A DNA stretch of 64,000 nt from Macrostomum hystrix (taxonomy: Eukaryota > Animalia > Platyhelminthes). Location: contig CATNEN010000039.1 of NCBI GenBank assembly GCA_950097015.1, positions 18,042,001 through 18,106,000 on the forward strand. Reading direction: 5' to 3'. Positions 14,310 through 47,000 of the stretch are shown here, piece by piece. Numbering within the stretch: position 1 is the first letter of the stretch; the number at the start of each line of letters is the position of its first letter. Position numbers and translations under genes: made by a program. The notes under the pieces were generated by a model. It ran no database searches and was not told the DNA's origin. It was given only the letters and a program-made list of their open reading frames with translations.

Positions 14310-14785
14310 GGCCAGGAATCATTTCAGGAATCGTATCAAGAATCGTAGCAAAGAAACGGATCAGGAATCGCATCTCAAGAATCGCCGCAGGAATCGTAGC
14401 ATAATAATCTTAGCAGGAATCGTACCTCAAGAATCGTATCAGGAATCGTATCAGGAATCGCAGCTTTAGAATCACTGCAGGAATCGCAGCTAGAACCACT
14501 GCAGGAATCGCAGCTAGAAACACTGCAGGAACCGTAGCTAGAATCACTGCAGGAATCGTAGCTAGAATCACTGCAGGAATCGTAGCTAGAATCACTGCAG
14601 GAACCGTAGCTAGAATCACTGCAGGAATCGCAGCTAGAATCACACCAGGAATCGTAGCTAGAATCACTCCAGAAATCGTAGCTAGAATCACACCAGGAAT
14701 CGCAGCTAGGATCACAGCAGGAATCGTAGCTAGGAATTCGTATCAGGAATTTTAGCTAGTAATCGTTTCAGGAATTGTAGCTCCA
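14310..14785. repeat. 24-bp minisatellite (GCAGGAATCGTAGCTAGAATCACT), left part, interrupted by a LINE
   Basis: The same unit resumes at 18524-18812; it accounts for the 'ILAAIPAV' ORFs. Confidence 0.9.
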
Positions 14786-17700
14786 ACAACAACAACAACA
14801 ATATACGCCAGGTCTCTCCATGGTCCATGGCGTCAGAAGGCATGTTTCAAGGCCTGGGCGCGAACAAAAGCAGGACCCCCGGCAGTATCCGGGGCGCCGG
14901 CGTCGGCTAGCAGGCAGTCGACGAAACGCCGAGTTCGCGCTTGCAAGCACCCTACCCCGCCGGTAGGGTGCTTGCGTCGTCAGCAGAAGTACCTCTTGCA
15001 CGGGCTGGGGGCAGTACTCCTCGGCTCGGATTAGGTGGCCTGCCAGCTGTAGCCGTCGACGGCGCAACAGCTCGCTTGGACGGGTCAGGCCGGCGCGGCG
15101 ATAGAGTGCCGCGTTGGTGGTCCGATCATCATTGCCGACTTTGAAGGCAGCACGCAGCAGGCCAGCGTGCGCTGCATCGACTAGATGCTCCAGCGTCTCC
15201 GTCAGCGTCCATGTCTCGGCGTTGTAAAGCAGGACGGTCTCGACCACCGCCTGGAACAGCGCCGCCCTCTGACGGTCAGGCGAGGCCACGGAATGCAGGA
15301 CAGCTCGCACCGAGTGGAAGGCTGCCCAGGCAAGACCGCGGCGACGCCGCAGATCCTCGCGGACGTTAGGCACCAGACCGCCAAGGTAGACGAATTGCTG
15401 ACAGCGCGGGAGTTCCGCCACCTGCCCGTCAGCGCCTCGGCAGAAAATTGCGGCCTCGATGTCGCCCGGCACGCAGAGCACGACGGTCTTCTGCGTGTTG
15501 ACCACCAGACCGACGCTCGCCACCGCAGCAACCAGCCTATCCAGCTGGCGTTGGGCGCCCTCGACAGTCGAGGACAGCAGGGCGAGATCGTCGGCGTAGC
15601 CAAGCACGCTGAGCCGCCTCTCTGGTTGGCGTCGACCCACGCGTCGCCGCAGCAGAAAACCGTCGTCATTAGTCGGCATGGCAGTGCGCAGCACCCAGTC
15701 TAGCACCAGAACGAACAGGAACGGCGCCAGCGTGTCCCCTTGAAGCACTCCGGAGGATGTGTCAAAGGGATCCGATAGGCCGTCCGGTGTCATCACGGCA
15801 GCTTTGGTGTCGTGGTACATCGCCATGACGGCGGAAACCAGCTGCTCTGGCACGTTGTAAGCGCGAAGCACCAATGGGAGCGCGGCCCTCAACACCGAGT
15901 CGAAGGCCTTCCTGAAATCTACGAAGATCAGGATCAGGATCGACTGGCGGATGTTCGCTTCCTCGATGACTCGGCGAAGAGCAAGGATCTGCGCCACTGT
16001 GCCGCGTTGGGGTCGGAACCCGTTCTGCTCGGGCCGCAGGTAGGGATCCAACACGGGCTGCAACCGGGATAGCAGCATCCGGTTAAACAGCTTCGCAGCG
16101 CAGGACTGCAGGCAGATGCCTCGATGCTCCTCTAGCTTTGTGGTGCCCGGCTTCTTCGGAATCGCGACGATGTGGGCCATGGTCCATTCGTTGGGCGCCG
16201 CCTCACCGGAAAGCACGCGATTCATCACACTGGCGACCTCGCCAGCCACACAGTGGAGCCGCAGTGCTTCGATGGGTACCTCGTCTGGACCCAGCGCTTT
16301 GCCGCCCGATGACTTTTGGGCCAGCAGTACAACATCATCCTTGGTGACCGGTGCCACGTTGAAACTCTCTGCCGACGGTAACGGCGTCTCCGGCGGCAGT
16401 CTCAGGTTGTTGGGTTGTGGGGGTGGCGGCGCGTTGACAGTGGCGGCGAAGAACTCGCGCAGCTCGTTGCGGCGCTCTTCAGCAGTGTCGCCAGCCAAGT
16501 TCAGTTGTAGGCGCCGCTTTCGCCCCGTCAGAGCATTGATGGCGGACCAGGCCACTCGACCTTTAGCGTCGGGCCCAGCGGCTGACACGGCCTTGATGGC
16601 GTCATCCACAGCGGCTTGCTGCCGTTGCAGGTAGACGACTGCTAGGGCCTCCTCAGCCTCGCGTGTAGGTCGCCTGCTCAGACGGAGCTTCTCCAGTTCC
16701 TCCCTCGCTTGCTGGATCACGGGGTCACTCTGCCAGACCGGCAGCCCACGCTGGGCCGGCTGCATCAGTGGGACCGCTTGCTCCGCTGCGGCTGGAACAG
16801 CAGCGCTGATCTCCGCGTACTCGGCACTTCCACACCTGCCGCCCAGCGCGGTGGTGAATGCGGTAGCGAAGCGGCGGCGCGTGTCAGCGTCCTTAAGCGC
16901 ACGGTAGTAGCGCCGCGGTGGCCGCTTAGGCGGGCGATAGAGCGGATCGCGTAGGTTGAGGTCGCAGACGAGGAGCTTGTGATCGGACCGCAGGACTAGC
17001 GGCGTGATAGCGCGGCAATTGGCAACGCGGCCTTGCTCACGAGAGCGCACAAGCACGTGGTCGAGCTGTGCTAGCCGTCGCGTAGCATTTCGGCGGCGCG
17101 CATTCCGCCTTCTCCGCTTGCAGCCCACAAAGGTTGCGAGCCTGCTCGGTGGTTTGCGGAAACGTGTGTTGGCCGACACCATGTCCTGCCTTTCCAGGAA
17201 GTCCTCCAGTGCTTCGGTATTGTTGTTCTCGCGTGGCGTAAAAAACAGCGACCGCTTGGACCTCCGTGCAACTGCGTTCAGGTCTCCAAGAACGACCACA
17301 GTGTCTCGTTGTGCCATCTCCTCCACCAGCGCCGAGAGTTGCTCGAAGAAGCCTTGAGCCTCATCAGGGCGAGTGGAAGGGGGCGTGTACACACAGAATA
17401 GACGGGCGTTCCGGCCGCGGAGCCGGACGTCGACACGAAGCACACGGTCAGACAAGGAGACACAGCGAAATCTCTGCTGTAGCCTCGGCCCGATCAGCGC
17501 TCCAACTCCTCCACGGCCTCGTTGGTCCGCCGTTGAATAGTAGAAGGTCCAGCCGGCACCCAGGTCTTCACAGTGAAGGCCTGGTTCCGCCCTGATGGAC
17601 ACTTCCTGCAGAGAGATGATGTCGCAGCCCAGGTCTAGAGCTAGCTTCGCCAGCGCTCCTCTCCGCCAGTTGGCCTTGAGTGTGCGGCAGTTCAGCGTCC

Positions 17701-17962
17701 CGACCCGAAGCTTGCCTTCTGATAGAGCTGGGGCTCGATGCTGTTGAGCCTCACGGTCCCCGGCGCCACCCGGAAGATCCGAAGGACCAGCAGTGGTAGC
17801 ACTTCGACGGGTAGCGCCACGTAGCCGACCTCGCCGATTTCGCTCACGCCGGCGTTCAACGCGCCGGCGCATGCTTCGCTGCCCTCGCTTGGTCTTGCCG
17901 CTGTTGGCCGCCGCAGCAGCTAAGCGCGGCTCACCGACTTCACCACGTGGAGGTCGCGGCAT
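14768..17962 (-). CDS. AP endonuclease-reverse transcriptase polyprotein; C-terminus frameshifted by a 10-bp insertion
   Basis: APE motifs GTLNCRTL, SLQEV, GDLNA, LDHVLV, SDH; RT motifs IPKK, QNGFR, FVDFRKAFDSV, GVLQGDTLAPFLF, YADD, YLG; RTE-type tail LLYNAETW. Confidence 0.95.
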   Translation of the reverse strand: MPRPPRGEVGEPRLAAAAANSGKTKRGQRSMRRRVERRRERNRRGRLRGATRRSATTAGPSDLPGGAGDREAQQHRAPALSEGKLRVGTLNCRTLKANWRRGALAKLALDLGCDIISLQEVSIRAEPGLHCEDLGAGWTFYYSTADQRGRGGVGALIGPRLQQRFRCVSLSDRVLRVDVRLRGRNARLFCVYTPPSTRPDEAQGFFEQLSALVEEMAQRDTVVVLGDLNAVARRSKRSLFFTPRENNNTEALEDFLERQDMVSANTRFRKPPSRLATFVGCKRRRRNARRRNATRRLAQLDHVLVRSREQGRVANCRAITPLVLRSDHKLLVCDLNLRDPLYRPPKRPPRRYYRALKDADTRRRFATAFTTALGGRCGSAEYAEISAAVPAAAEQAVPLMQPAQRGLPVWQSDPVIQQAREELEKLRLSRRPTREAEEALAVVYLQRQQAAVDDAIKAVSAAGPDAKGRVAWSAINALTGRKRRLQLNLAGDTAEERRNELREFFAATVNAPPPPQPNNLRLPPETPLPSAESFNVAPVTKDDVVLLAQKSSGGKALGPDEVPIEALRLHCVAGEVASVMNRVLSGEAAPNEWTMAHIVAIPKKPGTTKLEEHRGICLQSCAAKLFNRMLLSRLQPVLDPYLRPEQNGFRPQRGTVAQILALRRVIEEANIRQSILILIFVDFRKAFDSVLRAALPLVLRAYNVPEQLVSAVMAMYHDTKAAVMTPDGLSDPFDTSSGVLQGDTLAPFLFVLVLDWVLRTAMPTNDDGFLLRRRVGRRQPERRLSVLGYADDLALLSSTVEGAQRQLDRLVAAVASVGLVVNTQKTVVLCVPGDIEAAIFCRGADGQVAELPRCQQFVYLGGLVPNVREDLRRRRGLAWAAFHSVRAVLHSVASPDRQRAALFQAVVETVLLYNAETWTLTETLEHLVDAAHAGLLRAAFKVGNDDRTTNAALYRRAGLTRPSELLRRRRLQLAGHLIRAEEYCPQPVQEVLLLTTQAPYRRGRVLASANSAFRRLPASRRRRPGYCRGSCFCSRPGLETCLLTPWTMERPGVYCCCCCWSYNS

Positions 17963-18523
17963 ATATCTGCACCGAGGTGCAAATATATTAAGTCTGCAAA
18001 TATATTAAGTCTGCAAATATATTAAGTCTGCAAATATATTAAGTCTGCAAATATATTAAGTCTGCAAATATATTAAGTCTGCAAATATATTAAGTCTGCA
18101 AATATATTAAGTCTGCAAATATATTAAGTCTGCAAATATATTAAGTCTGCAAATATATTAAGTCTGCAAATATATTAAGTCTGCAAATATATTAAGTCTG
18201 CAAATATATTAAGTCTGCAAATATATTAAGTCTGCAAATATATTAAGTCTGCAAATATATTAAGTCTGCAAATATATTAAGTCTGCAAATATATTAAGTC
18301 TGCAAATATATTAAGTCTGCAAATATATTAAGTCTGCAAATATATTAAGTCTGCAAATATATTAAGTCTGCAAATATATTAAGTCTGCAAATATATTAAG
18401 TCTGCAAATATATTAAGTCTGCAAATATATTAAGTCTGCAAATATATTAAGTCTGCAAATATATTAAGTCTGCAAATATATTAAGTCTGCAAATATATTA
18501 AGTCAGAGAGAATGAGTATCTGA
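14786..18523 (-). mobile_element. Full-length non-LTR retrotransposon (RTE-like, single APE-RT ORF)
   Basis: 9-bp direct repeat GTAGCTCCA at 14777-14785 and 18524-18532 (candidate TSD); (TTG)n 3' tail at ~14786-14801; single long ORF; 5' UTR carries a 17-bp tandem array. Confidence 0.88.
17978..18504. repeat. perfect 17-bp tandem array (TGCAAATATATTAAGTC) x ~31 in the LINE 5' UTR
   Basis: Units appear identical; the array lies between the ORF start and the distal TSD. Confidence 0.97.
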
Positions 18524-18812
18524 GTAGCTCCAGGATCACAGCAGGAATCGCAGCTAGAATCACAGTAGGAATCGCAGCTAGAATCACAGCAGAAATCGCA
18601 GCTAGGATCACAGCAGGAATCGCAGCTAGGATCATAGCAGGAATCGCATCTATGATCATAGCAGGAATCGCAGCTAGGATCATAGCAGGAATCGCATCTA
18701 TGATCATATCAGGAATCGCAGCAGGAGTCGTTGCTAGAATCACTGCAGGAATCGCAGCTAGAATCACAGCAGGAATCGTAGCTAGGAATTCGTATCAGGA
18801 ATCGTAGCTCAT
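18524..18812. repeat. 24-bp minisatellite, right part (same family as 14310-14785)
   Basis: GCAGGAATCGCAGCTAGAATCACA units. Confidence 0.9.
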
Positions 18813-19275: not shown

Positions 19276-21090
19276 TGTAGCTGACTTGCTACAAATGTTG
19301 CTGTTAAATTTAAGAGTCGGCAAAAGCTTGGGCTTGTTTATTTAGTTTTGTCGTGGGGTTACATTTAAGTCTTAACCGGGCAACTGTACCTATCGATAAC
19401 AAGGGTCATAGACAAATTAGCGGTAAGGGGGGAAATAAAAGTACCATTTGAATCTTTAAATATTAAGAGTTAAAAGAAAGAAGTGAATTTGCTGCTACAA
19501 GATACTCCCCCCACCCAAAACGGAGTTTATGCAAAGGTTTTGATTGTCGTTATGAAACAGTTAGAAAACGATGCTTTTCAGTTAGGTTAATAATGGTTCA
19601 GTTGCGTAAAACAGTTTAACAGATGGTTCTGTGGAAAAACGAACGTGGGAAGCGGTTTTAGCACGTATGTTTGCTGCCGGTGGGTTTTCCGGTGTTACAG
19701 TAGTTGCTGGTGCTTTGCTAATTGGTACCGGTGCTGGGAGTGTAGCTGGTTTCACTCGATCGATAGACACTACAGAAGGCTTGCCGTTGATTTCCAATGT
19801 AAATGTCGTTTCGTGTCTCTCCAACACTGCATAGGGTCCCTGGTAGGGTGCTTCTAGGGGACGTCGAACTCGATCTAGTCGCAACCAGACGTGGGTGCAT
19901 GCAGCCAAGTCTGCTGGCAGATGAATTCTTACCTCGCGCGTTCGTGGTTGGCGATACGGAAAAAAAAGTTGGTGCAGTCTTGTGGAAAGTTCCTTGACAG
20001 AGGAGGTGTCGGCAACTACAGGTGGGACTAATGGTTGTTCACCGGTAACGATGGAGAATGGCGATGCACCTGTCTCGTCTGCAAAAATGCGCATTCCGAG
20101 AAGCACGATGGGTAGCTGCTGCAGCCAGTTCTTGCCACGTGCTTTCAGCCCGGACTTTAATGTTCGGTGGGTTCGCTCGACGATGCCATTTGCCCTCGGA
20201 TTATAGGCTGAAGTGCGGATGTGATGGATTCCGAGCAGTGTCGCCAGGTTTCGCATGAGCTCCGCGCGGAACTGCGCGCCTTGATCGGTCACCAGCGTCA
20301 ATGGTGGGCCAAACCGAGAAATCCAGGATTCTAGGAAGGCGCACGCGACTGAAGTGGCGGTGATGTCAATGAGAGGGGCAGCTTCAATCCAACGTGAATA
20401 TGCATCGACCATTGTGAGCAAGTAGCGAGGTCTGGGACTAACGTCGGTCGACTCTGGGGGTGGCAGTGGTCCGACTAAATCGATATGGACCGTCGTGAAG
20501 CGTTGAGAGGGTGCTGGAAGCTGTTGCAACGGGCGTTGGACGTGACGACCTGTCTTGCACTGCTGGCACTGTTGACATTCGGCTACCCACCTTTGGATGT
20601 CGTTAGCCATACCTAGCCAGAAAAAACGATAAACGATGAGTCGTTGCGTGGCTTTGCGGCCAGGATGTGCGAATGCATGCAGCGAGTCAAAAACAGCGCG
20701 TCGGAGAGTCCTAGGGATGACGGGACGTGGGTTTGTCTGCGAGATTTCGCATCGCAGTGGGAAGTCCTTGATTCCAATGTCGAAGTTGCTGAAACGGCCT
20801 GTCTGGGGTTCATCCTCCGGGTTTTCCTTCTGTGCTCGTGCAACGGCTGGCAGGTCCACACATTGAGGAAGGTCAGACAGCAGTCGAATTGTGGTTGGTG
20901 GCGGGTTCTGGGATGGGTAAACCGGTCGTGATAGCGTGTCGGCTACGATGTTGTCCTTGCCGGAAATGTGGATGATGTCGCTCACAAACTCCGTGATGAC
21001 GGATAGCTGGCGTTGTTGTCGATCGGAAAACCGTTCTTTCTTATTTCTAAACGCTCCGCTGATGGGCTTGTGGTCGCAGAACCACATTAG
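19276..21090 (-). mobile_element. 5'-truncated Ty3/Gypsy LTR retrotransposon: end of RNase H, integrase, PPT and 3' LTR
   Basis: Integrase ORF, then polypurine tract GGGTGGGGGGAG (~19505-19516), then a putative 224-bp LTR 19499-19276 with TGTAGC...GCTACA termini and an AATAAA on the minus strand. Confidence 0.8.
19582..21087 (-). pseudogene. Gypsy pol fragment (RNase H C-terminus, HHCC zinc finger, DDE integrase, GPY motif)
   Basis: DHKP...HISGKDNIVADTLSR; H-AFA-H...CQQC; VHIDLVGP, VTDQG, NGIVER; PYQGPY. No gag, protease or RT upstream. Confidence 0.92.
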
Positions 21091-21178
21091 GTTCTGAGTC
21101 TCTCTGACGCCCGAGTCTCACCTCTCTCGTAATCTAGAAACACTGCTTAGGCAATACATTGTTGCAGTCAAATTAAAA

Positions 21179-24100
21179 ATGCCAACCAATTTCTCAGTTG
21201 GAGCATTGCTGAGGACTGTTTGCATCTTCCTGATGCAAGCCGCTGCAGGAATTCGCGGCCGCAGGAGCGCTTCGTCAGCGGACCATGCGGAGTTCCTGCT
21301 TGCTGTTCTGCTAGGAGATGTACGAACCATAGACCACTGTCTGAGAAGGGGTTTGAAGTTAAACGCTTTGTATGCGTTTGATGGAATAATGATTTCTCCT
21401 CTCAATATTGCAATCACTATCGGGCGATTGGAATCTGTACATTTCCTGCTCAATGCTGGAGCTGATGTTGACCTCCAAAATCTGAATGGAGAATCGGCCA
21501 TCCACTTTGCATCACAAAAAGGGCATCAGCAAGTCGTTGAGTCACTCATCAAAGCAAAAGCCGACGTTAACCTTCAAAAAAAAAATGGCGTCTCACCTCT
21601 CTACGTTGCATCAGCATTTGGGCATCAGCAAGTCGTTGAGTCACTCATCAAAGCACAAGCCAACGTTAATCTTCAAGCTAAAAATGGCGTCTCACCTCTC
21701 TACGTTGCATCACAAAATGGGCATCAGCAAGTCGTTGAGTCACTCATCAAAGCACAAGCCGACGTTAACCTTCAAGCTAAAAATGGCGTCTCACCTCTCT
21801 ACGTTGCATCACAAAATGGGCATCAGCAAGTCGTTGAGTCACTCATCAAAGCACAAGCCGACGTTAACCTTCAAGAAATCGATGGGTGCTCACCTCTCTT
21901 CATTGCATCACAAGAAGGGCATCAGCAAGTCGTTGAGTCACTCATCAAAGCTGACGCCGGCGTCAACATTCAAGAGAAGGTAAAAGGCATCTCACCTCTC
22001 TTCATTGCATCACAAAATGGCCATCAGCAAGTCGTTGAGTCACTCATCAAAGCACAAGCCGACGTTAATCTTCAAGAGAAGGTCCGTGGCTTCTCACCTC
22101 TCATCGTTGCATCACACGATGGGCATCAGCGAGTCGTTGAATTGCTCATCAAAGCACAAGCCGACGTCAATCTTCAAGAAATCGATGGGTGCTCACCTCT
22201 CTACATCGCATCACAAAATGGGCATCAGGATGTCGTTGAGTCACTCATCAAAGCACAAGCCAACGTTAATATTCAAGCTAAAAATGGCGTCTCACCTCTC
22301 TACGTTGCATCACAAAATGGGCATCAGCAAATCGTTGAGTCACTCATCAAAGCACAAGCCAACGTTAATCTTCAAACTAAAAATGGCGACTCACCTCTCT
22401 ACGTTGCATCAGCATTTGGGCATCAGCAAGTCGTGGAGTCACTCATCAAAGCTCACGCCCGCGTCAACATTCAAGAGAAGGTAAAAGGCTCCTCACCTCT
22501 CTTCATTGCATCACAAAATGGGCATCAACAAGTCGTTGAGTCACTCATCAAAGCTCACGCCCGCGTCAACATTCAAGAGAAGGTAAAAGGCTCCTCACCT
22601 CTCTTCATTGCATCACAAAATGGGCATCAACAAGTCGTTGAGTCACTCATCAAAGCAAAAGCCGACGTCAATCTTGCGCAGAAAAATGGCACCTCACCTC
22701 TTCATATTGCATCACAAAATGGGCATCAACAAGTCGTTCAGTCACTCATCAAAGCAAAAGCCGACGTCAATCTTGCGCAGAAAAAAGGCGCCTCACCTCT
22801 CTACGTTGCATCAGCATTTGGGCATCAGCAAGTCGTTGAGTCACTCATCAAAGCTCACGCCCGCGTCAACATTCAAGAGAAGGTAAAAGGCTCCTCACCT
22901 CTCTTCATTGCATCACAAAATGGGCATCAACAAGTCGTTGAGTCACTCATCAAAGCACAAGCCGACGTTAATCTTCAAACTAAAGATGGCGTCTCACCTC
23001 TCTACATTGCATCACAAAAAGGGCATCAGCAAGTCGTTGATGCACTCATCAGAGCTGGAGCCGAAGTCATAGATCCTCATCTTGATCTGTAAGTTTGTGT
23101 TTTGTGAAAATTTGCTTTCATATTTTTTACATAACTTGCTCAACGTTCAGCATGTAGAGTCCTAATTTGGAATCATTTTAAATTGGAAATTGAGCATGGC
23201 ATTTGACTTCTCCACGATCGTAAGCACACTTTTATAATTGTCAGGAATCCTAGCGCATTTATGGTCAGAAATTACCTTTAAACCTGGATCTTTTTTCTTT
23301 TGCTTTATGAGCAACCTGTCTTTATAATGGAGTCCATTAAACCGTAAGGACGAGTTAATTAAGAAGAGTTCTGACGCGGTTATCACTAAAGATTTTATTC
23401 GTTTAAGCTTCCTTGTTCTCTGCTGTCTACGAGCTCGTATTTAGCTCAATCGAACATTCTAGAACTCCCTCGAAAGTGGATCTTGTTATAATCTTCGGAA
23501 GTGAGTTGAGCAATTCCCGGGTTATATTAGTGCAAAAGCGATCAGTACCAATTGTAGTTTGACTGATGACACTCTCTGATGTTGGACAAGACTCACATTG
23601 GATCTCTACAATCCATTTACCTGTTGGCCAAGGCCTATACGTGACCGGCGACCAAAATTCTGCTTCGTGAATTGTGTTCTAGAGCATTGTTGTTGTTCTA
23701 CATGCACCTATATTTAACATAGTTTATTTCTTCAAAGAAAATCAAACTTGCTTTCGATTCCAGAGCTCACTTAAAGCCACCCGCTGAGCATCCAAGTCTC
23801 ACCGACTCACAGCTGAGTGAGCTGCTGCACTCAAAACTCAGTCTTTCTGGCTTTGTGGACACCAGAGCTGCCTTGCAGAGCGCTGCTGCTGACGTTTTTG
23901 AAGAGATCCTGAGGAAGAGGCTGAATAGTAAAGTATTTGTCATAGGCAGCTTTTCGGAAGGCTGGGGCAACAGTCTTACGACCCTGGACGGTAAAACCGA
24001 CATCAAGTCCGATATTGACATCATGATGCTTATCCCTGGCCGTCTCTACCACTTAAGAGACCTGTGCGAGTGCAGTACGTCAAGTGAGAAGTTGGAGTAC

Positions 24101-25993
24101 AAAAATGGTCACGTGATTTGTTCTGGATTTGGTGAGTAAAACATACGAGCGTAATACTATTTTACACATTTTCAGATCTTAGTTGTCAGTAAGAAATATA
24201 CTTTTGCTTGGGTCTAAAACATAAATTTTAGTACTCAAATCAATTCTTTACCACTCAGTAAACTACCGGTCCTAGTTTTGACGCTGTAAGGACGAAGGGA
24301 AGATTCTGTACAGGATTTAGGACAGACGTGCGACTTGCATGCTAACTTTATCGATAAATTTGGATAACATACTTGATAAATATACGATTTGGAATGCACA
24401 AATCTGCACTTATGTGAAGTCTACTTGCATTATGCATTCTAAAACAGAGTCAGCATCATCTGCTTGTTTGGCTATACCTGGGCTGTAGGCAGAAGGCTTC
24501 GTTTAATTGTTCGTATACACACAGATTTAGTTGATTGCCCAGTCTCAAAGTCTGTGATCTTTATGAGAAGGAGAAAAATATTTATTTGTCAACAAGCCCT
24601 TTATTGTCGTCTAACATCAGGAATTGCCGAACTGAATTGCAGCATCGAACCCCGCTCAGCCGATACCCGGATTCCCTGGAGGCCGGCAGTGGACCTTGTC
24701 TCCGCCTGCCTTCTGTGCAGCTACCCGCCTCTCGCACCGCTCCAATCGGACCGAACATCAACCTCCAATATCCCACAATCCGTGCTGGAGTCTCTCCGGC
24801 GAGATCTCGTCTCCACCTCATCGCCCTGTCACCTGGTACACGCAGCCTGTCCTGGTCGAGCAGGCAAAGAGCTCCGTGTAAGCACCAGCTTTCTGGAGAA
24901 ACGGCTGCTGAGAAGCCTCAACAGCCTGCAAGGCCAGCTGTTCGTCACACTCAAGTACCTGGTGAAGAAGGTCATCTGTCCGAGTGACGGGGCTATTCAA
25001 GGTCTGAAGCCGTATCACGCGAAGACTATCTTGTTCCGCATGTTGGAGCAGACACCGGCGGAGCAGTGGAAGCCGGAGAATCTCGTGAGCCTTTTGAGAC
25101 AATCCCTGGAGATGCTGCTGGACAGCGTGAAGAGCAGCTGCAGACCTGACAATACCGATGGTCGAATCATGGAGCACTTCTTTCTGATGGATGCCTCACT
25201 GTACCTCAAGGGAGTTGATCGACAAAAGTCGATTGATACACTCAGCAAACTCGCCGACAAATTAAGAGCTGAGATTGAGCGACTACCTGAGATTCTGGTG
25301 CAGTTTGCGGACAGCCTCAAGCCCGTGAGTAAGTCGGGCAGATTCTATTTCCACCCGTTCCAAATCCTGCCAGATCTAAGACCTAGTTCCGTGCCACAGT
25401 ATAGTAACAAAATAGAATATCATGATATCTACCACGTCGTCAGAGAAAGTGTTCTGCGACTGTCCGATCGGGATTGCAGCCAGCAAGAATCTCTCATGGA
25501 GCTGATTGGCAGACTGCCAAACTGTGCCTTCACGACACGGGAGGCTCTGAGAGCGCTGGCCTGCCTCAAGTTCGGTGACAGAGAGACTGCTGAGCAGATT
25601 TTGAACCGGAGCATGGGGCATAGGGTGAGCAGAGGCATCGATATGATTGCTTCGATGCCGAAAGTCTATGTAACGACAGATTTCTTGTGGCGGCATCTGG
25701 AACGTCACAACTCCGCATGGAAGTTCTGCTTCGGGTTTGACGGGCGGATACAAATCAGCTTCGTGACTGGAGGACTTCTAAAGCATTTTTTTCCCAAAAA
25801 GTTAGCTGTTGGCGATTTCTTCATCAACTTCGAAGCCGTGCTGTGGGCTCTGCGCCTCGAACTCTGGACGCACAGCACTGCAAGAGCTCAGGAATGGATC
25901 CGACAAGAGAGTTATCAGGAGGACCCTGATGAGGAGAAGCTGGAGGAGCTGTGGGAGCTGGAGCAAGCGCGTATACGCCAACGTTCATTCTGA
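21179..25993 (+). CDS. Ankyrin-repeat / Mab-21 (cGAS-like receptor, cGLR) nucleotidyltransferase fusion protein, ~1216 aa, 3 exons
   Basis: Exons 21179..23088 (CT|GTAAGT, phase 2), 23764..24131 (CAG|A ... G|GTGAG, phase 1) and 24621..25993 (CAG|GA) splice in frame. Exon 1 has 17 ANK repeats plus an N-cap. Exon 2 has IGSFSEG-x-SDIDIM; exon 3 has AVDLV...YP, HLV, RVSTSFLEKRLL, LKPYHAKTILF, QW..ENL, HFF, the Mab-21/cGAS fold signature. Confidence 0.85.
21485..23060 (+). repeat. coding tandem array of 99/102-bp ankyrin units with high nucleotide identity
   Basis: Near-invariant GGCATCAGCAAGTCGTTGAGTCACTCATCAAAGC core in 16 successive units. Confidence 0.97.
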
Positions 25994-32534: not shown

Positions 32535-35500
32535 TGTTGTGTATTGACTGACTGAATGCTAATTTACGCATACTGCCACTATGAGTAGTGCAGTGAGGAA
32601 GCTAGTAGTTTCTAGAACCTTCTGTAGCCAGAATATTCTAGAACCTTCTATAGTCCGTGTTTTCTAGAACTTTCGATTTAACATATCAGCTACCTATAAA
32701 TATACGGACACAAAGCTATCACAAAAAGGATAACTTCTCAATTTGGAATCTGCCAACAAATCCGTTGTTCCCTTCGTTCACTACATAACAACTGGCGACG
32801 AGGATGGCCCTCAACGTTAGCCCACCGACACCGTACCTGCCGGCAAGCGGACCTCCAGCAGTTCCATGGAATCGATGGCTAGACGCTTTCGATATCTATT
32901 GCCAAGCGGCGCAGATCTGGACTGACCGGCCGGCAGAGGGCGAAGCTCCAACAGAGGAAGCTACGCGACTGGCAACGAGGAGCCGCAACATGCTGCTGCA
33001 CCTGCTCGGTTTCGAAGGGCAGCGGATTGCCAGGGCACGCAACGCGATTGTCGACGGCCACACCTTCTGGCAAACCCGCGACATGCTGACGACTGTGTTT
33101 GGCGACCGGCCAAACGTGATGTTGGCGCGTCACCGATTCCGGGAGCGACATCAGCTGCCCGGAGAGGACGCAGTCACGTTTGTCGCAGCACTACGCGAGC
33201 TGTCAGCCACCTGCAACTACGGAGCAATGGCTGACGAAATGATCCGCGACCAGCTGGCCCAGAAAACCAGCAGCAGCCGGATTCGTGAGCGCCTGCTGAC
33301 TGAGGACGCCGCCAGGCTGACACTGGACCAAGCCATCGTGATCGCGACGACTATCGAGGAGGCAGCGGCAGGCAGCAAGGCGATGGCAGCAGCCGGCTCT
33401 TCAGGAAATGTCCAGGCTGTGCAGGAGGCCAGACCCCGAGGTCACCATGGCGCTCCGTCCAAGAAGAAGCCAGGGCAGCAAGCCGGAGGATCCTGCCAGC
33501 GATGCGGCCGCAGCCATGATGGCAAAGCCCAATGTCCCGCGCACGGCAAGAAGTGCAACAACTGCGGCAAACTGAATCACTTCAGCCGATGCTGCCGCAA
33601 TAAGACAATGCAGGTCAGCGCGGAAGAGACAATCTACGCAGTCCACGGCAACAACGAGGTCCGCGCAGACCTTCAGCTCGGCAGCATCCGAAAGACCGTC
33701 AGCCTGATGGTCGACTGCGGTGCCAAGGTGTCTCTGCTGAACGAGGCCACGGCACGGGGCTTGGGCGACATTCGCCTAAGAACGTCGTCGATGAGGCTAC
33801 GAGCCTACGGCGGGAAGCTGATCGCCCTAGCTGGGATCGCAACAGTGCCCGTCAAGCACCACAGCCGTGAGCTCCAACACGACTTCTACGTCACGAGGTC
33901 TGGCGAGAACCTCATCGGCCGCGACCTGATGGAGAAGCTAGGCTTCCGCGTGCAACTGCAGCCGCCAGCTGAGATCGGTGCCGAGATCGCCAGCGTAGAC
34001 ATCGAGCGAGAGTTCCCAACGGTCTTCAGCGGCTCGATCGGTCTCTGCAAAGGCGCAGTGCACAAACCGAGGATTAACGCAGCGGTGCCACCAGTGCAGC
34101 AGCCGCTCCGTCGACTTCCGCTCGCTAAGCAGCAACAAGTCGGCGAGGAGCTGGACCGTCTGGAGGCCATGGGAATCATCGAACGGGTGAATTCCAGCCC
34201 ATGGATCTCCAACTTGGTTGTCGCTAACAAGAAGGACGGAAATATTCGAGTCTGCATTGACGTGCGAGAGCCGAACAAGTCGCTCGTCATCGACCGGCAC
34301 CCGATGCCGCAGCTGGACGAGATCTCGGCCAAGATCAAAGCGGCCGGAGGCAGCGTGTTCTCCAAGATCGACCTTAAGGCAGGATACATGCAGATGAAGC
34401 TGCACGAGTCATCACGTGACCTGACAGCATTCATTACTCACCAGGGTCTGTATCGCTACTGCAGGGTGCCGTTCGGCCTTGCTTCTGCACCGGCGGCATT
34501 CCAGAGGATGCTGGACGACCTGGTGTCTGATCTGCAGGGTGTTGAGCACATCCTGGACGACTTCATCGTCTTCGGAGCAACTGAAGCCGAGCACGACTCG
34601 AGGCTGCGAGCACTGCTGAAGCGATTGGAGGACGCCGGTCTCACTGCCAACAAGGACAAGTGCCAGCTGCGGAGGACTGAGATTGAGTTCTTTGGCTTCA
34701 TCTTCTCAGCCAACGGCATGCGACCGTCTGAGAGTCAGACCAACGGCCAGACCGAGAGACTCAACAGGACGCTGATGGACAGCATCCGAGCGGCCAGGGC
34801 GGCGAACATTCCGATGCAGGACGCGCTGCTGCAGTTCCTTGAGGCTTACCGCAGCACTCCACACGCCCTGACTGGGAAGAGCCCGGCTGAGCTGATGCTG
34901 GGCAGGCGATGGCGCACAGCCCTGTCTCTGCTGTCACCGTCTAAGGACAACGCGGTTGCGCATACCGAGATGGCCCAGCGAATCCAAGAGCGCCAGCAGC
35001 GGACGGCAGCCTACACGGACCAGCGGCGAAGAGCGCGACCGCCGGCACTGCGCGCCGGCGACTGGGTTCGGGTGCGGCGTCCAATACGACGGGGCAAGCT
35101 CGGAACGCGGCTCTCGGCGCCGCTTCGGATCGTCAAAACGATGGGCGCTGCTTGCCGACTGACCGACGGCAGCACCTGGAATCAGCAGGCACTCGTACCA
35201 ACATCGATGCGCCTGAGCCCCGAGACACCGGTGCCTGACGAGCTCGACCCGCTCATCGACTTTCAAGGACAGCACACGGTTCCGGACGATGGAGGCGGAG
35301 ATCCCTTGCCTGCACCGGATCCAGCACAGGGACTAGCGACCCCGCCGGTACGACGATCCGGTCGGCCGAGGCGACCTGTGCAGCGTTATGGCTTCTGACT
35401 GACTGATTTTGCGGAGAGGGGGAAGATGTTGTGTATTGACTGACTGAATGCTAATTTACGCATACTGCCACTATGAGTAGTGCAGTGAGGAAGCTAGTAG

Positions 35501-44000: not shown

Positions 44001-47000
44001 CCTGGACGACTGGGACCCGGTGAGTGACATTTAGATAATGAATTTCGGATATTTAGCATTGCGTAATAGTTCACAATATTTTATTTTCACTTGTTTGTTT
44101 AAAATTTTTTGCAGGCAAGCTGTTTGTCTGAGTCGGACTGGTACACTTTTCTGCAGGCATTCTACAGGGTGGCGCAGTGAGTGAACTCCTGATTAAATAG
44201 AGAAAGAGACAGGGAAGTAGGCAGTAAAAAGTAGGCAGGGAGAAGTAGATTGCTAGAAGTAGATAGTTAGGGTTAGAAGTAGACAGAAAGAATTAGACCA
44301 CGAGAAGAAGACAGCTAGAAGTAGACAACAGGGAGAAGTAGACAACAGGGAGAAGTAGACAACAGGGAGAAGTAGACAACAGGGAGAAGTAGACAACAGG
44401 GAGAAGTAGACAACAGGGAGAAGTAGACAACAGGGAGAAGTAGACAACAGGGAGAAGTAGACAACAGGGAGAAGTAGACAACAGGGAGAAGTAGACAACA
44501 GGGAGAAGTAGACAACAGGGAGAAGTAGACAACAGGGAGAAGTAGACAACAGGGAGAAGTAGACAACAGGGAGAAGTAGACAACAGGGAGAAGTAGACAA
44601 CAGGGAGAAGTAGACAACAGGGAGAAGTAGACAACAGGGAGAAGTAGACAACAGGGAGAAGTAGACAACAGGGAGAAGTAGACAACAGGGAGAAGTAGAC
44701 AACAGGGAGAAGTAGACAACAGGGAGAAGTAGACAACAGGGAGAAGTAGACAACAGGGAGAAGTAGACAACAGGGAGAAGTAGACAACAGGGAGAAGTAG
44801 ACAACAGGGAGAAGTAGACAACAGGGAGAAGTAGACAACAGGGAGAAGTAGACAACAGGGAGAAGTAGACAACAGGGAGAAGTAGACAACAGGGAGAAGT
44901 AGACAACAGGGAGAAGTAGACAACAGGGAGAAGTAGACAACAGGGAGAAGTAGACAACAGGGAGAAGTAGACAACAGGGAGAAGTAGACAACAGGGAGAA
45001 GTAGACAACAGGGAGAAGTAGACAACAGGGAGAAGTAGACAACAGGGAGAAGTAGACAACAGGGAGAAGTAGACAACAGGGAGAAGTAGACAACAGGGAG
45101 AAGTAGACAACAGGGAGAAGTAGACAACAGGGAGAAGTAGACAACAGGGAGAAGTAGACAACAGGGAGAAGTATACAACAGGGAGAAGTAGACAACAGGG
45201 AGAAGTAGACAACAGGGAGAAGTAGACAACAGGGAGAAGTAGACAACAGGGAGAAGTAGACAACAGGGAGAAGTAGACAACAGGGAGAAGTAGACAACAG
45301 GGAGAAGTAGACAACAGGGAGAAGTAGACAACAGGGAGAAGTAGACAACAGGGAGAAGTAGACAACAGGGAGAAGTAGACAACAGGGAGAAGTAGACAAC
45401 AGGGAGAAGTAGACAACAGGGAGAAGTAGACAACAGGGAGACATGCAGTACACATGTCAACCCGGGTCCCAATCCAACCGCACCTTCAGTTACGGCGCCC
45501 GCATTCGGGATTCGGACTCGCTAAAGTCGCGCTGTCGCGAGCTGTGCGCCGCCCTCCGCTCCGAATATCCCCAATTCGACATCGACGGCTATCGCAACGC
45601 GTGGATTGTGAAGCCGGGCGCCAAGTCGCGTGGCCGCGGCATCTTCTGCGTTCGGACGCTGGAATCGGTGATGGAGCTGGTTAGGCAGCCGTCTGCTGTC
45701 GGCGTCAGTGCCAACAAGCTGGTTGTGCAAAAGTACATCGAACGACCGCTATTAGTGCATCGAACTAAATTTGACATTCGTCAGTGGTTTGTGGTGACGG
45801 ACTTCAATCCGCTGACAATTTGGTGGTACAAGGACTGCTATGTGAGATTCTGCTCGCAACACTTCACACTGAACGATTTCAACGAGTGAGTTGCGAGACA
45901 AACTTGAAATTGTAATTTTTTAAATCTTTTTTTTTTCAGAAAAAGCTCGTTAGCTTGTTAGCTGGGGAGAGAAGGCTTGGGAGCTTGTCTTAATTTACCC
46001 TAAAATGGTAAATTATAGTATATACATTTTATTATCCTGAGAAGCGTTTTGTCTTCTAGGAAAGTTATTTCATAAAACTTGTGAAAACAACAAATTTAAT
46101 TATTAGAAGTCCTTTTTCTTGAAATCAATTGGTTGGTTTCTAAGAAAGTAGTTGATTTCTTAGAAAGTAGATGATTTCTTAGAAAGTAGATGAATTCTTA
46201 GAAAGTATATGATTTCTAGAAAGTATATGATTTCTTAGAAAATAGTTGCTTACTCAGAAAGTAGTTGATTTCTTAGAAAGGGGTTTGTTGTGTAATGATC
46301 GATGCTGGCTAGCCGATGTGCAGTCTTTCTCTTTCTCTCTCAGTGCACCTGCCCCCCAGTCCCCCATTGACGCGTACAATGTACATTGCTCACTGCACTT
46401 GACTAAACAATAATATATATATCGGCTCTCTGCCCATCGCTGGCTTTAAGCGTTTCGTAGCTCGCACACACTCGCCTTGACTTCTAACATAACATGGCGT
46501 CGCAAGTCTAAACTTTCTAGCAAGCCAGCATGGATGGATTGAGGCCGCCAGAGCCCATGATTTTTGACACCAATAGGGCAGACAACTGGAGGCGATGGAT
46601 CAGTGCATTTGATTTCTACATGAAAGCTACGAAGAGGACTGAAGAAAGTGAAGAAGTGAAGATCGCTGTTCTCCTGACCGCGCTTGGATCCGATGGACAG
46701 GACGTATTCTCCACGTTTCCTGCAGACCAAGTAGCAACGTACGCAGCTGTAAAGAGTGCGTTCCAAGAGTACTGCGAGCCTCTGTCGAATGAGACCTTTG
46801 AGCGCTACCAGCTTCGAACAAGAGTGCAAGGAGAAGCTGAGGACTTCGACCAATTCGTCGGCTCACTTCGCCAGCTCATCAAGCGATGCAACTACAGCGA
46901 GCCAGCGAACAAGGAGACCATCGAGAACAGCGTCATTCGAGATCAGATCGTCATCGGTGCGAACGACCCAGCTCTGAGGGAGAGGCTTCTCCGCGAGACA

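What the first reader, a model, noticed from the sequence alone, without database searches (positions are those of the whole stretch)
21395..23070. Ankyrin repeats diversified at binding-surface positions and shuffled as cassettes (natural DARPin-like library)
Seen: the scaffold GHQQVVESLIKA is almost invariant, even at synonymous sites. Variation concentrates in the beta-turn (QKKNGV, QAKNGV, QEIDGC, QEKVKGI, QEKVRGF, QTKNGD, QEKVKGS, AQKNGT, AQKKGA, QTKDGV) and helix 1 (YV/FI/IV/YI/HI and QN/AF/QE/HD/QK). The same sub-modules reappear in new combinations, and repeats 11-12 largely recur as 15-16. All lie in a single exon. Established: these positions form the concave ligand-binding face of ankyrin proteins, and fungal NLRs use highly conserved ANK/TPR/WD arrays in this way to generate new specificities by unequal crossing-over. 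Inference: a recombination-driven variable recognition module coupled to a cGAS-like output, which I do not know to have been described as a system.
Basis: partly seen in the sequence, partly recalled or inferred. Interest (0 to 1): 0.85.

Follow-up and report, generated by a model that had tools for sequence, protein, structure and literature searches.

The report
Hypervariable ankyrin array on flatworm cGAS-like gene
A flatworm gene joins 17 near-identical ankyrin repeats, which differ mainly at the residues such repeats use to grip partners, to a cGAS-like enzyme; the pattern matches fungal immune receptors and suggests an inherited, fast-reshuffling sensor, but its ligand, its expression and its variation between individuals are all untested.

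Summary
One open frame (21179-23088) holds 17 ankyrin units of 99 or 102 bp. The scaffold is nearly invariant. Variation sits in helix 1 and the beta-hairpin. Five of the six most variable codon columns are DARPin-randomised positions (P=1.5e-4).

Sub-modules are reassorted: 77 of 190 informative site pairs fail the four-gamete test, and exact 119-129 nt blocks recur at offsets of 102, 300 and 402 bp.

The exon splices, by sequence only, to two Mab-21/cGAS-like exons. The genome matches Macrostomum hystrix (220 Mb, 42 contigs) and holds at least 94 related Mab-21 exons. Twenty related arrays have 7-57 units. In this array every unit's scaffold is closest to another unit of the same array, and the 340 units pooled differ three times less within arrays than between them.

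Nonsynonymous change is about 6.5-fold enriched at surface codons. Family-wide omega is 1.8-2.3. For this array alone it is 1.4, not significant.

This is the regime known from fungal NLR repeats. Ankyrin-cGLR fusions, including Macrostomum lignano ones, are already catalogued (Li et al. 2023). Nothing points to somatic diversification.

Polymorphism, expression and ligand remain untested. This scan has reported the same pattern on other DNA of this genome.

The parts
21179..23088 (+). Exon 1 (1,910 nt, ends in phase 2). It holds an N-terminal hydrophobic segment, a degenerate cap region and 17 ankyrin units.
   Evidence: ORF. Pfam Ank E=5e-128. The start MPTNF..LMQA is conserved with paralogue ORFs. 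The donor GTAAGT at 23089 was read.
21179..21250 (+). N-terminal hydrophobic segment of about 24 aa (MPTNFSVGALLRTVCIFLMQAAAG), shared in layout with paralogues. Possibly a membrane anchor; function untested.
   Evidence: Read by eye.
21395..21592 (+). Units 1 and 2. Unit 1 is a divergent, cap-like repeat (43-50 nt differences from every other unit). Unit 2 is a transitional repeat.
21593..22993 (+). Core array, units 3-16 (99 or 102 bp each). The scaffold is homogeneous. The hypervariable codon columns are 4, 8, 9 and 28-34.
22391..22657 (+). Source or copy of a recent intra-array block duplication (unit 11, unit 12 and the head of unit 13).
   Evidence: Exact repeats of 119-129 nt at offsets 102, 300 and 402 bp. 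Units 11 and 15 differ by 1 nt.
22793..22957 (+). Second copy of the duplicated block (unit 15 and the head of unit 16).
22994..23088 (+). Unit 17, a divergent C-terminal cap-like repeat (…VVDALIRAGAEVIDPHLD).
23089..23763 (+). Intron 1 (GTAAGT … AG). Inferred from sequence and reading phase only.
   Evidence: No RNA run was available.
23764..24131 (+). Exon 2 (368 nt): linker plus the nucleotidyltransferase core motif GSFSEGWG…SDIDIM.
   Evidence: Open frame. It matches the family consensus FVVGSYSEGWGNSLTTLDGRTD..SDIDVM. The Pfam NTP_transf_2 hit is sub-threshold, E=0.063.
24132..24620 (+). Intron 2 (GTGAGT … AG). Inferred.
   Evidence: The junction is colinear with uninterrupted M. lignano proteins.
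24621..25993 (+). Exon 3: third acidic motif (RPAVDLV) and the Mab-21 C-terminal helical domain, through the stop codon.
   Evidence: Pfam Mab-21_C E=4.6e-8, 33.6 bits against a cut-off of 24.1. A family profile hits cGAS chains at E=3.5e-5. Open frame.
19582..21087 (-). Context: a retrotransposon integrase fragment abutting the 5' end of the gene. It is not part of the gene.
   Evidence: Pfam rve and Integrase_H2C2. Contigs of all three runs diverge at 21082.

Best explanation
The array is the N-terminal recognition or regulatory domain of a three-exon gene predicted to encode 1,216 aa. The gene fuses ankyrin repeats to a cGAS-like receptor (ANK-cGLR). It is one member of a family with at least 94 Mab-21 exons in a Macrostomum flatworm, most likely M. 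hystrix.

Shown:
- The repeats are homogenised within this array. Unit number differs between paralogues (7-57 units).
- Sub-modules have been reassorted, and multi-unit blocks have recently been duplicated.
- Amino-acid change is concentrated on the inner helix and hairpin.
- Family-wide, nonsynonymous change at those codons outruns synonymous change.

Inferred:
- The array evolves in the germline by unequal crossing-over and gene conversion, while selection favours diversity on the concave ligand-binding face. This is the regime described for the repeats of fungal NLRs.
- Ligand binding in the ankyrin groove would control the Mab-21 nucleotidyltransferase, by relief of autoinhibition or by clustering, and so trigger synthesis of a nucleotide signal.
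For: - Fold and register: Pfam Ank E=5e-128; alignment to a solved DARPin chain at E=2e-127; AlphaFold model with pLDDT 97.3, placing helix 1 at columns 2-9, helix 2 at columns 12-20, and loop plus hairpin at columns 21-34.
- Position-specific variation: amino-acid identity is 0.43 at eight surface columns and 0.88 elsewhere. Five of the top six variable columns are DARPin-randomised positions, P=1.5e-4.
- Enrichment: Fisher P=8.6e-4 for this array and P=3e-40 family-wide.
- Selection: among 153 closest unit pairs, surface codons show 146 nonsynonymous and 16 synonymous changes, against 84 and 60 elsewhere. Omega is 1.8 against local synonymous change. It is 2.3 against all synonymous sites (binomial P=1e-9). 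Positions 3 and 5 are individually significant, P about 0.001-0.002.
- Concerted evolution: the scaffold of every unit in this array is closest to another unit of the same array (0-11% against 11-24%). Visible array-specific scaffold signatures appear.
- Reassortment: Rm=6 and 77 of 190 site pairs incompatible; exact 119-129 nt repeats.
- Possible exchange between loci: ankyrin scaffold pS against paralogues is 0.20-0.52, while the Mab-21 exon pS for the same gene pairs is 0.54-0.60.
- Fusion partner.
- Family size.
- Precedent: Dyrka et al. 2014; Li et al. 2023.
Against: - For this array alone, local dN/dS at surface codons is only 1.4 (46 nonsynonymous, 6 synonymous) and is not distinguishable from 1.
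- Pairwise pN/pS at surface codons is about 1.0. Relaxed constraint plus scaffold-limited homogenisation could therefore produce the pattern without adaptive selection.
- Several 'variable' columns are linked packages, so there are fewer independent events than the counts suggest.
- This array is among the less homogeneous of the family: 76% pairwise identity and 83% to its consensus, under the 85% criterion used for fungal arrays.
- The splice model rests on sequence alone.
- One run carries a variant with a stop codon in unit 1.
- The assembly was polished with short reads, which can miscorrect tandem repeats.
Confidence: 0.6

Rival explanations
1. Neutral by-product. Surface positions of ankyrin repeats are simply unconstrained. 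Gene conversion and unequal crossing-over homogenise only the well-matched scaffold, because conversion tracts stop at diverged loops. The 'library' look would then arise without any selection for new specificities. The array might serve as a generic scaffold, a localisation domain or an autoinhibitory domain.
For: Pairwise pN/pS at surface codons is about 1.0 for this array and 1.1 family-wide. Parsimony-based local dN/dS is 1.08 family-wide and 1.40 for this array. Synonymous divergence is also about twofold higher at surface codons. Earlier notes of this scan report the same pattern on ankyrin arrays of channels and kinases in this genome (not tested here), which would fit a genome-wide repeat dynamic.
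Against: Among the closest unit pairs the synonymous rates at surface and scaffold codons are similar (4.0 against 3.0 per site), yet surface nonsynonymous change is 7.3 per site, giving omega 1.8-2.3. Positions 3 and 5 individually exceed the neutral expectation. The variable set matches the known paratope positions rather than all exposed positions.
Confidence: 0.25
2. The gene is a decaying or non-functional family member. Its variation would then partly reflect loss of constraint after a retroelement insertion next to its 5' end.
For: An integrase fragment ends about 90 bp upstream of the start codon. The locus is a singleton in a transposon-rich region. A variant contig in run X2 has CGA>TGA in unit 1. 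No RNA run was found.
Against: All three exons are open, for 1,216 codons in total. The GS…DID…D motifs are kept. The non-surface codons of the array show purifying selection, dN/dS 0.43. The start codon and N-terminus are conserved with paralogues.
Confidence: 0.1
3. Assembly or polishing artefact. The order and number of repeats, or the variant positions themselves, were created by long-read mis-assembly or by short-read polishing of a tandem array.
For: Short-read unitigs do not span the array. The published assembly was polished with Illumina reads.
Against: The longest exact internal repeat is 129 nt, and the whole array is 1.7 kb, so PacBio reads can span it. Unique flanks are identical in run X1. 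Unitigs matching individual units exactly exist in X1 (table 8). The same position-specific pattern recurs in 19 other arrays.
Confidence: 0.03
4. Somatic diversification. The array would be rearranged in body cells from donor cassettes, like lamprey variable lymphocyte receptors.
For: None directly. Only the cassette-like look of the units suggests it.
Against: The germline copy is a complete open reading frame. No orphan units exist elsewhere in the 64-kb window. At least 16 of the 20 genomic arrays are followed on the same strand by a Mab-21 exon and look like complete genes. The diversity is fully explained by differences between paralogues and between units in the germline.
Confidence: 0.02

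Closest known systems
[quoted passage not shown] 2007; Chevanne et al. 2010; Dyrka et al. 2014, PMC4986451)
   Same: Near-identical tandem repeats. Array-specific homogenisation, that is, concerted evolution. Differences in repeat number. Reassortment of repeats. Hypervariable positions on the inner helices and hairpin of ankyrin repeats, with signs of positive selection.
   Different: The attached module is a Mab-21/cGAS-like nucleotidyltransferase, not a NACHT or NB-ARC NTPase. The repeats are N-terminal, not C-terminal. The host is an animal. This array falls just under the 85% identity criterion. Allelic polymorphism, documented in Podospora, is untested here.
ANK-cGLR fusion architecture catalogued by Li et al. 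2023 (cGLRs are a diverse family of pattern recognition receptors; bioRxiv 10.1101/2023.02.22.529553)
   Same: Ankyrin repeats fused to a cGLR domain are listed as a recurrent architecture. M. lignano accessions with Ank_2 hits appear in the paper's domain table, and one (PAA86972.1) was in the biochemical screen. The best relatives of exon 3 are M. lignano Mab-21 proteins.
   Different: The text and supplements I could read describe the ankyrin part only as a predicted interaction domain. They do not mention internal conservation, hypervariable positions or concerted evolution. [quoted passage not shown]
DARPin libraries (designed ankyrin repeat proteins; randomised positions 2, 3, 5, 13, 14 and 33, from my own knowledge of Binz et al. 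2003)
   Same: A fixed consensus scaffold with diversity at the same hairpin and helix-1 positions. Five of the six randomised positions are the most variable columns here.
   Different: DARPins are an engineered library, not a natural family. Here position 1 is also highly variable, and the helix-1 positions 9 and 10 and loop positions 27, 29 and 32 vary in this array. Position 33 varies only weakly. A one-codon hairpin insertion exists. The diversity is a few dozen unit types, not a random library.
Lamprey variable lymphocyte receptors (LRR cassettes assembled somatically)
   Same: A repeat-protein recognition surface built from cassette-like units.
   Different: The germline gene here is complete, and no flanking donor cassettes exist. 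Nothing indicates somatic assembly.

Membership tests
Ankyrin repeat domain (Pfam PF00023 / PF12796) | 33-residue units matching the Ank profile, in tandem | tested here: met
   Ank E=5e-128 with 17 stretches; Ank_2 E=4e-121. DARPin and ankyrin-R chains at E=1e-127 to 1e-120.
Ankyrin repeat domain (Pfam PF00023 / PF12796) | Helix-turn-helix plus hairpin solenoid fold | tested here: met
   AlphaFold2 with a 27-row alignment gives pLDDT 97.3 and pTM 0.91, with two helices per unit at columns 2-9 and 12-20. The single-sequence run failed at pLDDT 47.
cGAS-like receptor / Mab-21 nucleotidyltransferase | Mab-21 C-terminal helical domain | tested here: met
   PF20266 scores 33.6 bits against a cut-off of 24.1, E=4.6e-8. 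A profile of close relatives hits cGAS chains at E=3.5e-5. Exon 3 alone finds no solved structure.
cGAS-like receptor / Mab-21 nucleotidyltransferase | Catalytic G-S … [DE]-h-[DE] … D motifs | tested here: inconclusive
   GSFSEGWG…SDIDIM and RPAVDLV are present and colinear with the family consensus. The only profile support is NTP_transf_2 at E=0.063, and exon 2 finds no solved structure.
cGAS-like receptor / Mab-21 nucleotidyltransferase | One transcript joining the ankyrin exon to the Mab-21 exons | tested here: inconclusive
   GT-AG sites in compatible phase give 3,648 coding nt. M. lignano proteins carry both domains (P0015). No RNA run was available.
cGAS-like receptor / Mab-21 nucleotidyltransferase | Ligand-dependent synthesis of a nucleotide second messenger | not testable with these tools
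   Needs biochemistry.
High-internal-conservation recognition repeats (fungal NLR type) | At least 85% identity between repeats over at least 100 aa (criterion of Dyrka et al. 2014) | tested here: not met
   This array has 76% mean pairwise identity and 83% identity to its consensus. Sixteen of the 19 paralogous arrays reach 0.87-0.94 identity to their consensus.
High-internal-conservation recognition repeats (fungal NLR type) | Variation concentrated on the binding face (inner helix and hairpin) | tested here: met
High-internal-conservation recognition repeats (fungal NLR type) | Positive diversifying selection at those positions | tested here: inconclusive
   Family-wide omega is 1.8-2.3 (P=1e-9 against all synonymous sites). 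For this array alone it is 1.4, not significant. No recombination-aware codon model was run.
High-internal-conservation recognition repeats (fungal NLR type) | Concerted evolution and repeat shuffling within and between family members | tested here: met
   Nearest scaffold neighbours lie within the array. Rm=6. Block duplications. Ankyrin scaffold pS is lower than Mab-21 pS against paralogues. The inference of exchange between loci is indirect.
High-internal-conservation recognition repeats (fungal NLR type) | Repeat-number polymorphism between alleles or individuals | not testable with these tools
   Only short-read unitigs from one study were available, and none spans the array. Between paralogues the unit number ranges from 7 to 57.
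High-internal-conservation recognition repeats (fungal NLR type) | Attachment to a NACHT or NB-ARC (STAND) NTPase | tested here: not met
   The partner is Mab-21 and no NTPase domain is present. The locus therefore works like these repeats but is not an NLR.
Somatically assembled repeat receptors (VLR type) | Incomplete germline gene flanked by donor cassettes | tested here: not met
   Complete ORF. No units outside 21395-23069 anywhere in the window.

The most novel reading that the evidence does not exclude
Macrostomum flatworms carry an inherited repertoire of roughly a hundred cGAS-like receptors whose ankyrin grooves diversify by concerted evolution plus selection. This would be the animal counterpart of fungal NLR repeat arrays. 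These cGLRs would then sense proteins or other non-nucleic-acid ligands with NLR-like, rapidly evolving specificity, rather than sensing DNA or RNA.
Probability: 0.35. Interest if true: 0.8.

Novelty: new variant of a known kind. Interest (0 to 1): 0.58.

Why it matters
Ligands are known for only a few characterised cGLRs, and those are nucleic acids. For most cGLRs the ligand is unknown.

A large family in which the enzyme is fused to a repeat domain that bears the evolutionary signature of a fast-changing protein-binding surface would point to a different recognition logic for cGLRs. In that logic, specificity is generated by repeat shuffling, as in fungal NLRs. It would also be an independent animal example of that diversification mechanism.

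It also gives testable material: defined hypervariable codons, natural unit variants, and a laboratory-tractable flatworm genus with inbred lines and wild samples.

Tried and rejected
- **Single-sequence AlphaFold of the ankyrin exon.** It gave a meaningless beta model (pLDDT 47.5). I discarded it and replaced it with an alignment-based model.
- **phmmer of exons 2 and 3 against solved structures.** Nothing was found. Only a family profile reached cGAS.
- **Reads.** Three runs from one study were found, all kept as short-read unitigs. They confirm the unique flanks but cannot span the array, so they say nothing on repeat-number polymorphism or somatic variants.
- **The single 'joint' 22178>22986 in X1.** It rests on one contig with 30 nt on its shorter side. 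I reject it as a unitig path through repeated sequence, not a deletion allele. The apparent X2 variants at 21865 and 21868 are the GTT/GTC and AAC/AAT alternatives that distinguish units, so those contigs are probably mislaid from other units.
- **Protein search with the ankyrin exon.** It returned generic ankyrin proteins from many phyla at 55% identity or less and no closer relative.
- **STING.** One hit falls below Pfam's cut-off (25 bits against 27). I do not claim a STING partner.
- **Shared loop cassettes between paralogues at nucleotide level.** Support is weak. Loop types recur (EKVxG, E[IV]DGC), but no loop of this array is identical to a loop elsewhere.
Full report
**What is there**

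Tandem Repeats Finder reports a 99-bp period, 15.5 copies and 84% matches at 21507-23055. The array lies inside one ORF, 21179-23092 on the + strand. That ORF matches Pfam Ank at E=5e-128 in 17 stretches.

I segmented it into 17 units starting at 21395. Five are 102 bp because of one extra hairpin codon (EKVxG). The last is 96 bp and the other eleven are 99 bp. Units 1 and 17 are divergent and cap-like. Units 2-16 differ pairwise by 1-26 nt.

At codon level the scaffold is close to invariant. Variation sits at columns 4, 5, 8, 9, 22, 24 and 27-34 of the unit, counted from S-P-L.

**Register and structure**

Alignment to a solved DARPin chain (5le2, E=2e-127) puts my columns 30, 32, 34, 8, 9 and 28 on the positions that differ between that DARPin's internal repeats. 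Those are the randomised positions 2, 3, 5, 13, 14 and 33; the numbering comes from my own knowledge of Binz et al. 2003.

A single-sequence AlphaFold run failed (pLDDT 47). A run with a 27-row alignment of paralogous arrays and other ankyrin proteins gave pLDDT 97.3 and pTM 0.91. It places helix 1 at columns 2-9, helix 2 at columns 12-20, and loop plus hairpin at columns 21-34. The variable residues therefore lie on the inner helix and the hairpin. Published co-crystal surveys assign this region as the ankyrin binding face (quoted in Dyrka et al. 2014).

**Is the concentration of variation more than chance?**

- In this array, amino-acid identity is 0.43 at eight surface columns (4, 8, 9, 28, 29, 30, 32, 34) and 0.88 at the rest.
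- Parsimony counts on a unit tree give 46 nonsynonymous and 6 synonymous changes at surface codons, against 20 and 16 elsewhere. Fisher P=8.6e-4.
- Across 20 arrays of the genome, five of the six most variable columns are DARPin-randomised positions. Hypergeometric P=1.5e-4.

**Cassette behaviour**

- Units 11 and 15 differ by 1 nt.
- Exact stretches of 119-129 nt recur at offsets of 102, 300 and 402 bp: 22436-22554 = 22538-22656 = 22838-22956, and 22529-22657 = 22829-22957. These show recent block duplications whose end points lie inside units.
- Among 20 informative biallelic sites, 77 of 190 pairs show all four gametes. The Hudson-Kaplan minimum is six exchanges within the 102-nt unit.
- For example, helix-1 types YV and FI each occur with both the 33- and the 34-codon hairpin. 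Because that difference involves an indel, recurrent mutation is an unlikely explanation.

**The gene**

- The ORF ends in a GTAAGT donor at 23089.
- An acceptor at 23762-23763 opens a 368-nt exon in the right phase. It encodes GSFSEGWG…SDIDIM.
- A GTGAGT donor at 24132 and an acceptor at 24619-24620 lead to a final exon. It encodes RPAVDLV and a Mab-21 C-terminal domain (PF20266, 33.6 bits against a cut-off of 24.1).
- The three exons sum to 3,648 coding nt, or 1,216 codons.
- Both junction regions are colinear with uninterrupted M. lignano proteins (consensus). A profile of those relatives hits cGAS chains at E=3.5e-5.
- The N-terminus MPTNF…LMQA is shared with paralogue ORFs, so the start codon is the family's own.
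- No RNA run was available, so the splice model is inferred.

**Organism and family**

The best relatives of exon 3 are all M. lignano proteins, at 57% identity or less. The assembly has 220,453,370 bases in 42 contigs. That matches the published M. hystrix assembly: about 220 Mb in 42 contigs, PacBio with canu, Arrow and pilon polishing, inbred line SR1, pooled worms.

The genome holds at least 94 matches to exon 3. The nearest is 64% identical. A DNA search with the array found 59 matches, which I resolved into 20 arrays of 7-57 units. For at least 16 of them a Mab-21 exon lies downstream on the same strand.

This locus is the only one found on its contig, and the window around it is rich in transposons. 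The window contains no ankyrin units outside the gene.

**Concerted evolution**

Several arrays have their own visible scaffold signature: GHQQVVESLIKAQ here, GHKEVVDSLIKAR on C38, GHNDVVHSLIKAR on C18, GHHEVARSLIQAG on C3 and C2. The hairpin and helix-1 positions vary in all of them.

For every unit of this array, the scaffold segment is closest to another unit of the same array (0-11% divergence) and 11-24% from the best unit elsewhere. Over all 340 units, mean scaffold divergence is 0.057 within arrays and 0.179 between them.

Against 16 paralogues, synonymous divergence of the Mab-21 exon is 0.54-0.60, while that of the ankyrin scaffold is 0.20-0.52. This fits exchange of units between loci after the genes diverged. 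Synonymous constraint on the scaffold is an alternative I cannot exclude.

**Selection or relaxation?**

- Pairwise Nei-Gojobori values at surface codons are pN 0.30 and pS 0.27 family-wide, and 0.36 and 0.36 for this array. Elsewhere they are 0.035 and 0.077.
- Taken locally, omega is therefore about 1. That is what relaxed constraint on codons with older genealogies would give.
- Multi-hit codons inflate pS in that method. I therefore restricted the count to minimum-spanning-tree edges between units differing by 5 nt or fewer, and to single-nucleotide codon changes.
- That gave 146 nonsynonymous and 16 synonymous changes at surface codons, against 84 and 60 elsewhere. Synonymous rates per site were similar (4.0 and 3.0). 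Omega was 1.8 locally. Against all synonymous sites it was 2.3 (binomial P=1e-9).
- On array trees, positions 3 and 5 exceed the neutral expectation individually, P about 0.001-0.002 uncorrected.

I read this as moderate family-level support for diversifying selection. For this array alone the result is inconclusive (omega 1.4). Recombination can bias all of these counts, and no recombination-aware model was available.

**Artefact and polymorphism**

The longest exact internal repeat is 129 nt and the array is 1.7 kb, so the PacBio reads of the published assembly can span it. Run X1 matches the unique flanks exactly, and short-read unitigs break inside the array as expected.

Run X2 differs at 7 of 404 nt in the 5' part, including CGA>TGA at 21425 in unit 1. 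It also differs at a few sites inside the array. This could be an allele or a close copy in another sample. It shows sequence differences but says nothing about repeat number. Variation between individuals and somatic variation remain untested.

**Comparison with what is known**

Li et al. 2023 list ANK-cGLR fusions as an architecture, mention them in a coral, and include M. lignano accessions with Ank_2 hits in their domain table. One was cloned, without its ankyrin part, for their screen. The fusion itself is therefore known.

The evolutionary regime is known from fungal NLR repeats. Dyrka et al. found high internal conservation in only 0.8% of metazoan ANK, TPR and WD repeat proteins.

My literature searches found no description of this regime for animal cGLR ankyrin arrays. 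That is the new element.

This locus is not an NLR, because it has no NTPase domain. It also falls just under the 85% identity criterion, whereas 16 of the 19 paralogous arrays reach 0.87-0.94 identity to their consensus.

**Earlier notes of this scan**

Other windows of this genome have already been reported as ANK-cGLR genes and as hypervariable ankyrin arrays on cGLR, channel and kinase genes. My analyses were done independently of those reports and agree with them. I did not test the channel and kinase cases. If they hold, they suggest that array homogenisation is widespread in this genome, which slightly favours the neutral rival.

**Verdict**

The most likely account is a germline, recombination-driven, surface-diversifying ankyrin recognition module on a cGAS-like enzyme. 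It is a new variant of a known kind, with expression, polymorphism, ligand and enzymatic output all still to be shown.

Noticed in passing
window 21425 (also 21165, 21300, 21311, 21331, 21405-21406): A contig of run X2 covering 21133-21536 differs at 7 sites from the window. One difference is CGA>TGA, a stop codon in ankyrin unit 1. It may be a null allele or a close copy in another sample.
   Followed up: partly
window 19582-21087 (-), boundary at 21082: A retrotransposon integrase fragment (rve, Integrase_H2C2) ends about 90 bp upstream of the gene's start codon. Contigs of all three runs continue differently beyond 21082, so it belongs to a multi-copy element truncated here. X2 also diverges upstream of 21133.
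   Followed up: partly
window 21179-21250: A hydrophobic N-terminal segment of about 24 residues is conserved in layout across paralogues: MPTNFSVGALLRTVCIFLMQA here, MAFNFVFQALRMIVTILMQA in L047, MFPLLRILTAVLVYLMNS in L004. It may be a membrane anchor or a signal-like helix, which would be unusual for a cGAS-like protein.
   Followed up: no
G000:C2:9104529-9104996 (-), locus L049:526-1536: This is the only STING ligand-binding-domain match in the genome. It scores 25 bits against a cut-off of 27 (E=1.4e-5 in the Pfam scan), in a 337-aa open frame. It could be a divergent STING-like receptor for the cGLR family, but it is unconfirmed.
   Followed up: partly
ankyrin arrays and Mab-21 exons of 16 paralogues (L002-L048): Between this gene and its paralogues, the ankyrin scaffold is much less diverged at synonymous sites (0.20-0.52) than the Mab-21 exon (0.54-0.60). 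This suggests that repeat units have been exchanged between loci.
   Followed up: partly
L047 (G000:C2:6148000-6151243): The paralogue with the closest Mab-21 exon (64% identity) has an ordinary, internally diverged ankyrin array. Its second catalytic acidic residue is replaced (SDIGVL instead of SDIDIM), so the family contains non-homogenised and possibly inactive members.
   Followed up: no
window 18000-18809: A perfect 17-bp tandem repeat, 29.7 copies at 100% identity, lies at 18000-18504. It is followed by 24-, 48- and 72-bp repeats at 18532-18809.
   Followed up: no
window 14768-17962 (-), 32804-35398 (+), 46530-50642 (+): Three retroelement ORFs: a LINE-like ORF with endonuclease and reverse transcriptase, a second reverse transcriptase ORF, and an LTR-type pol with RT, RNase H and integrase. 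The gene sits in a transposon-rich stretch.
   Followed up: partly
window 44253-45455 (-) and 51574-52584 (-): Overlapping long ORFs lie in strongly skewed, low-complexity sequence (GC skew 0.33, AT skew 0.43 around 44-46 kb). They have only spurious Pfam matches and are probably simple repeats rather than genes.
   Followed up: no
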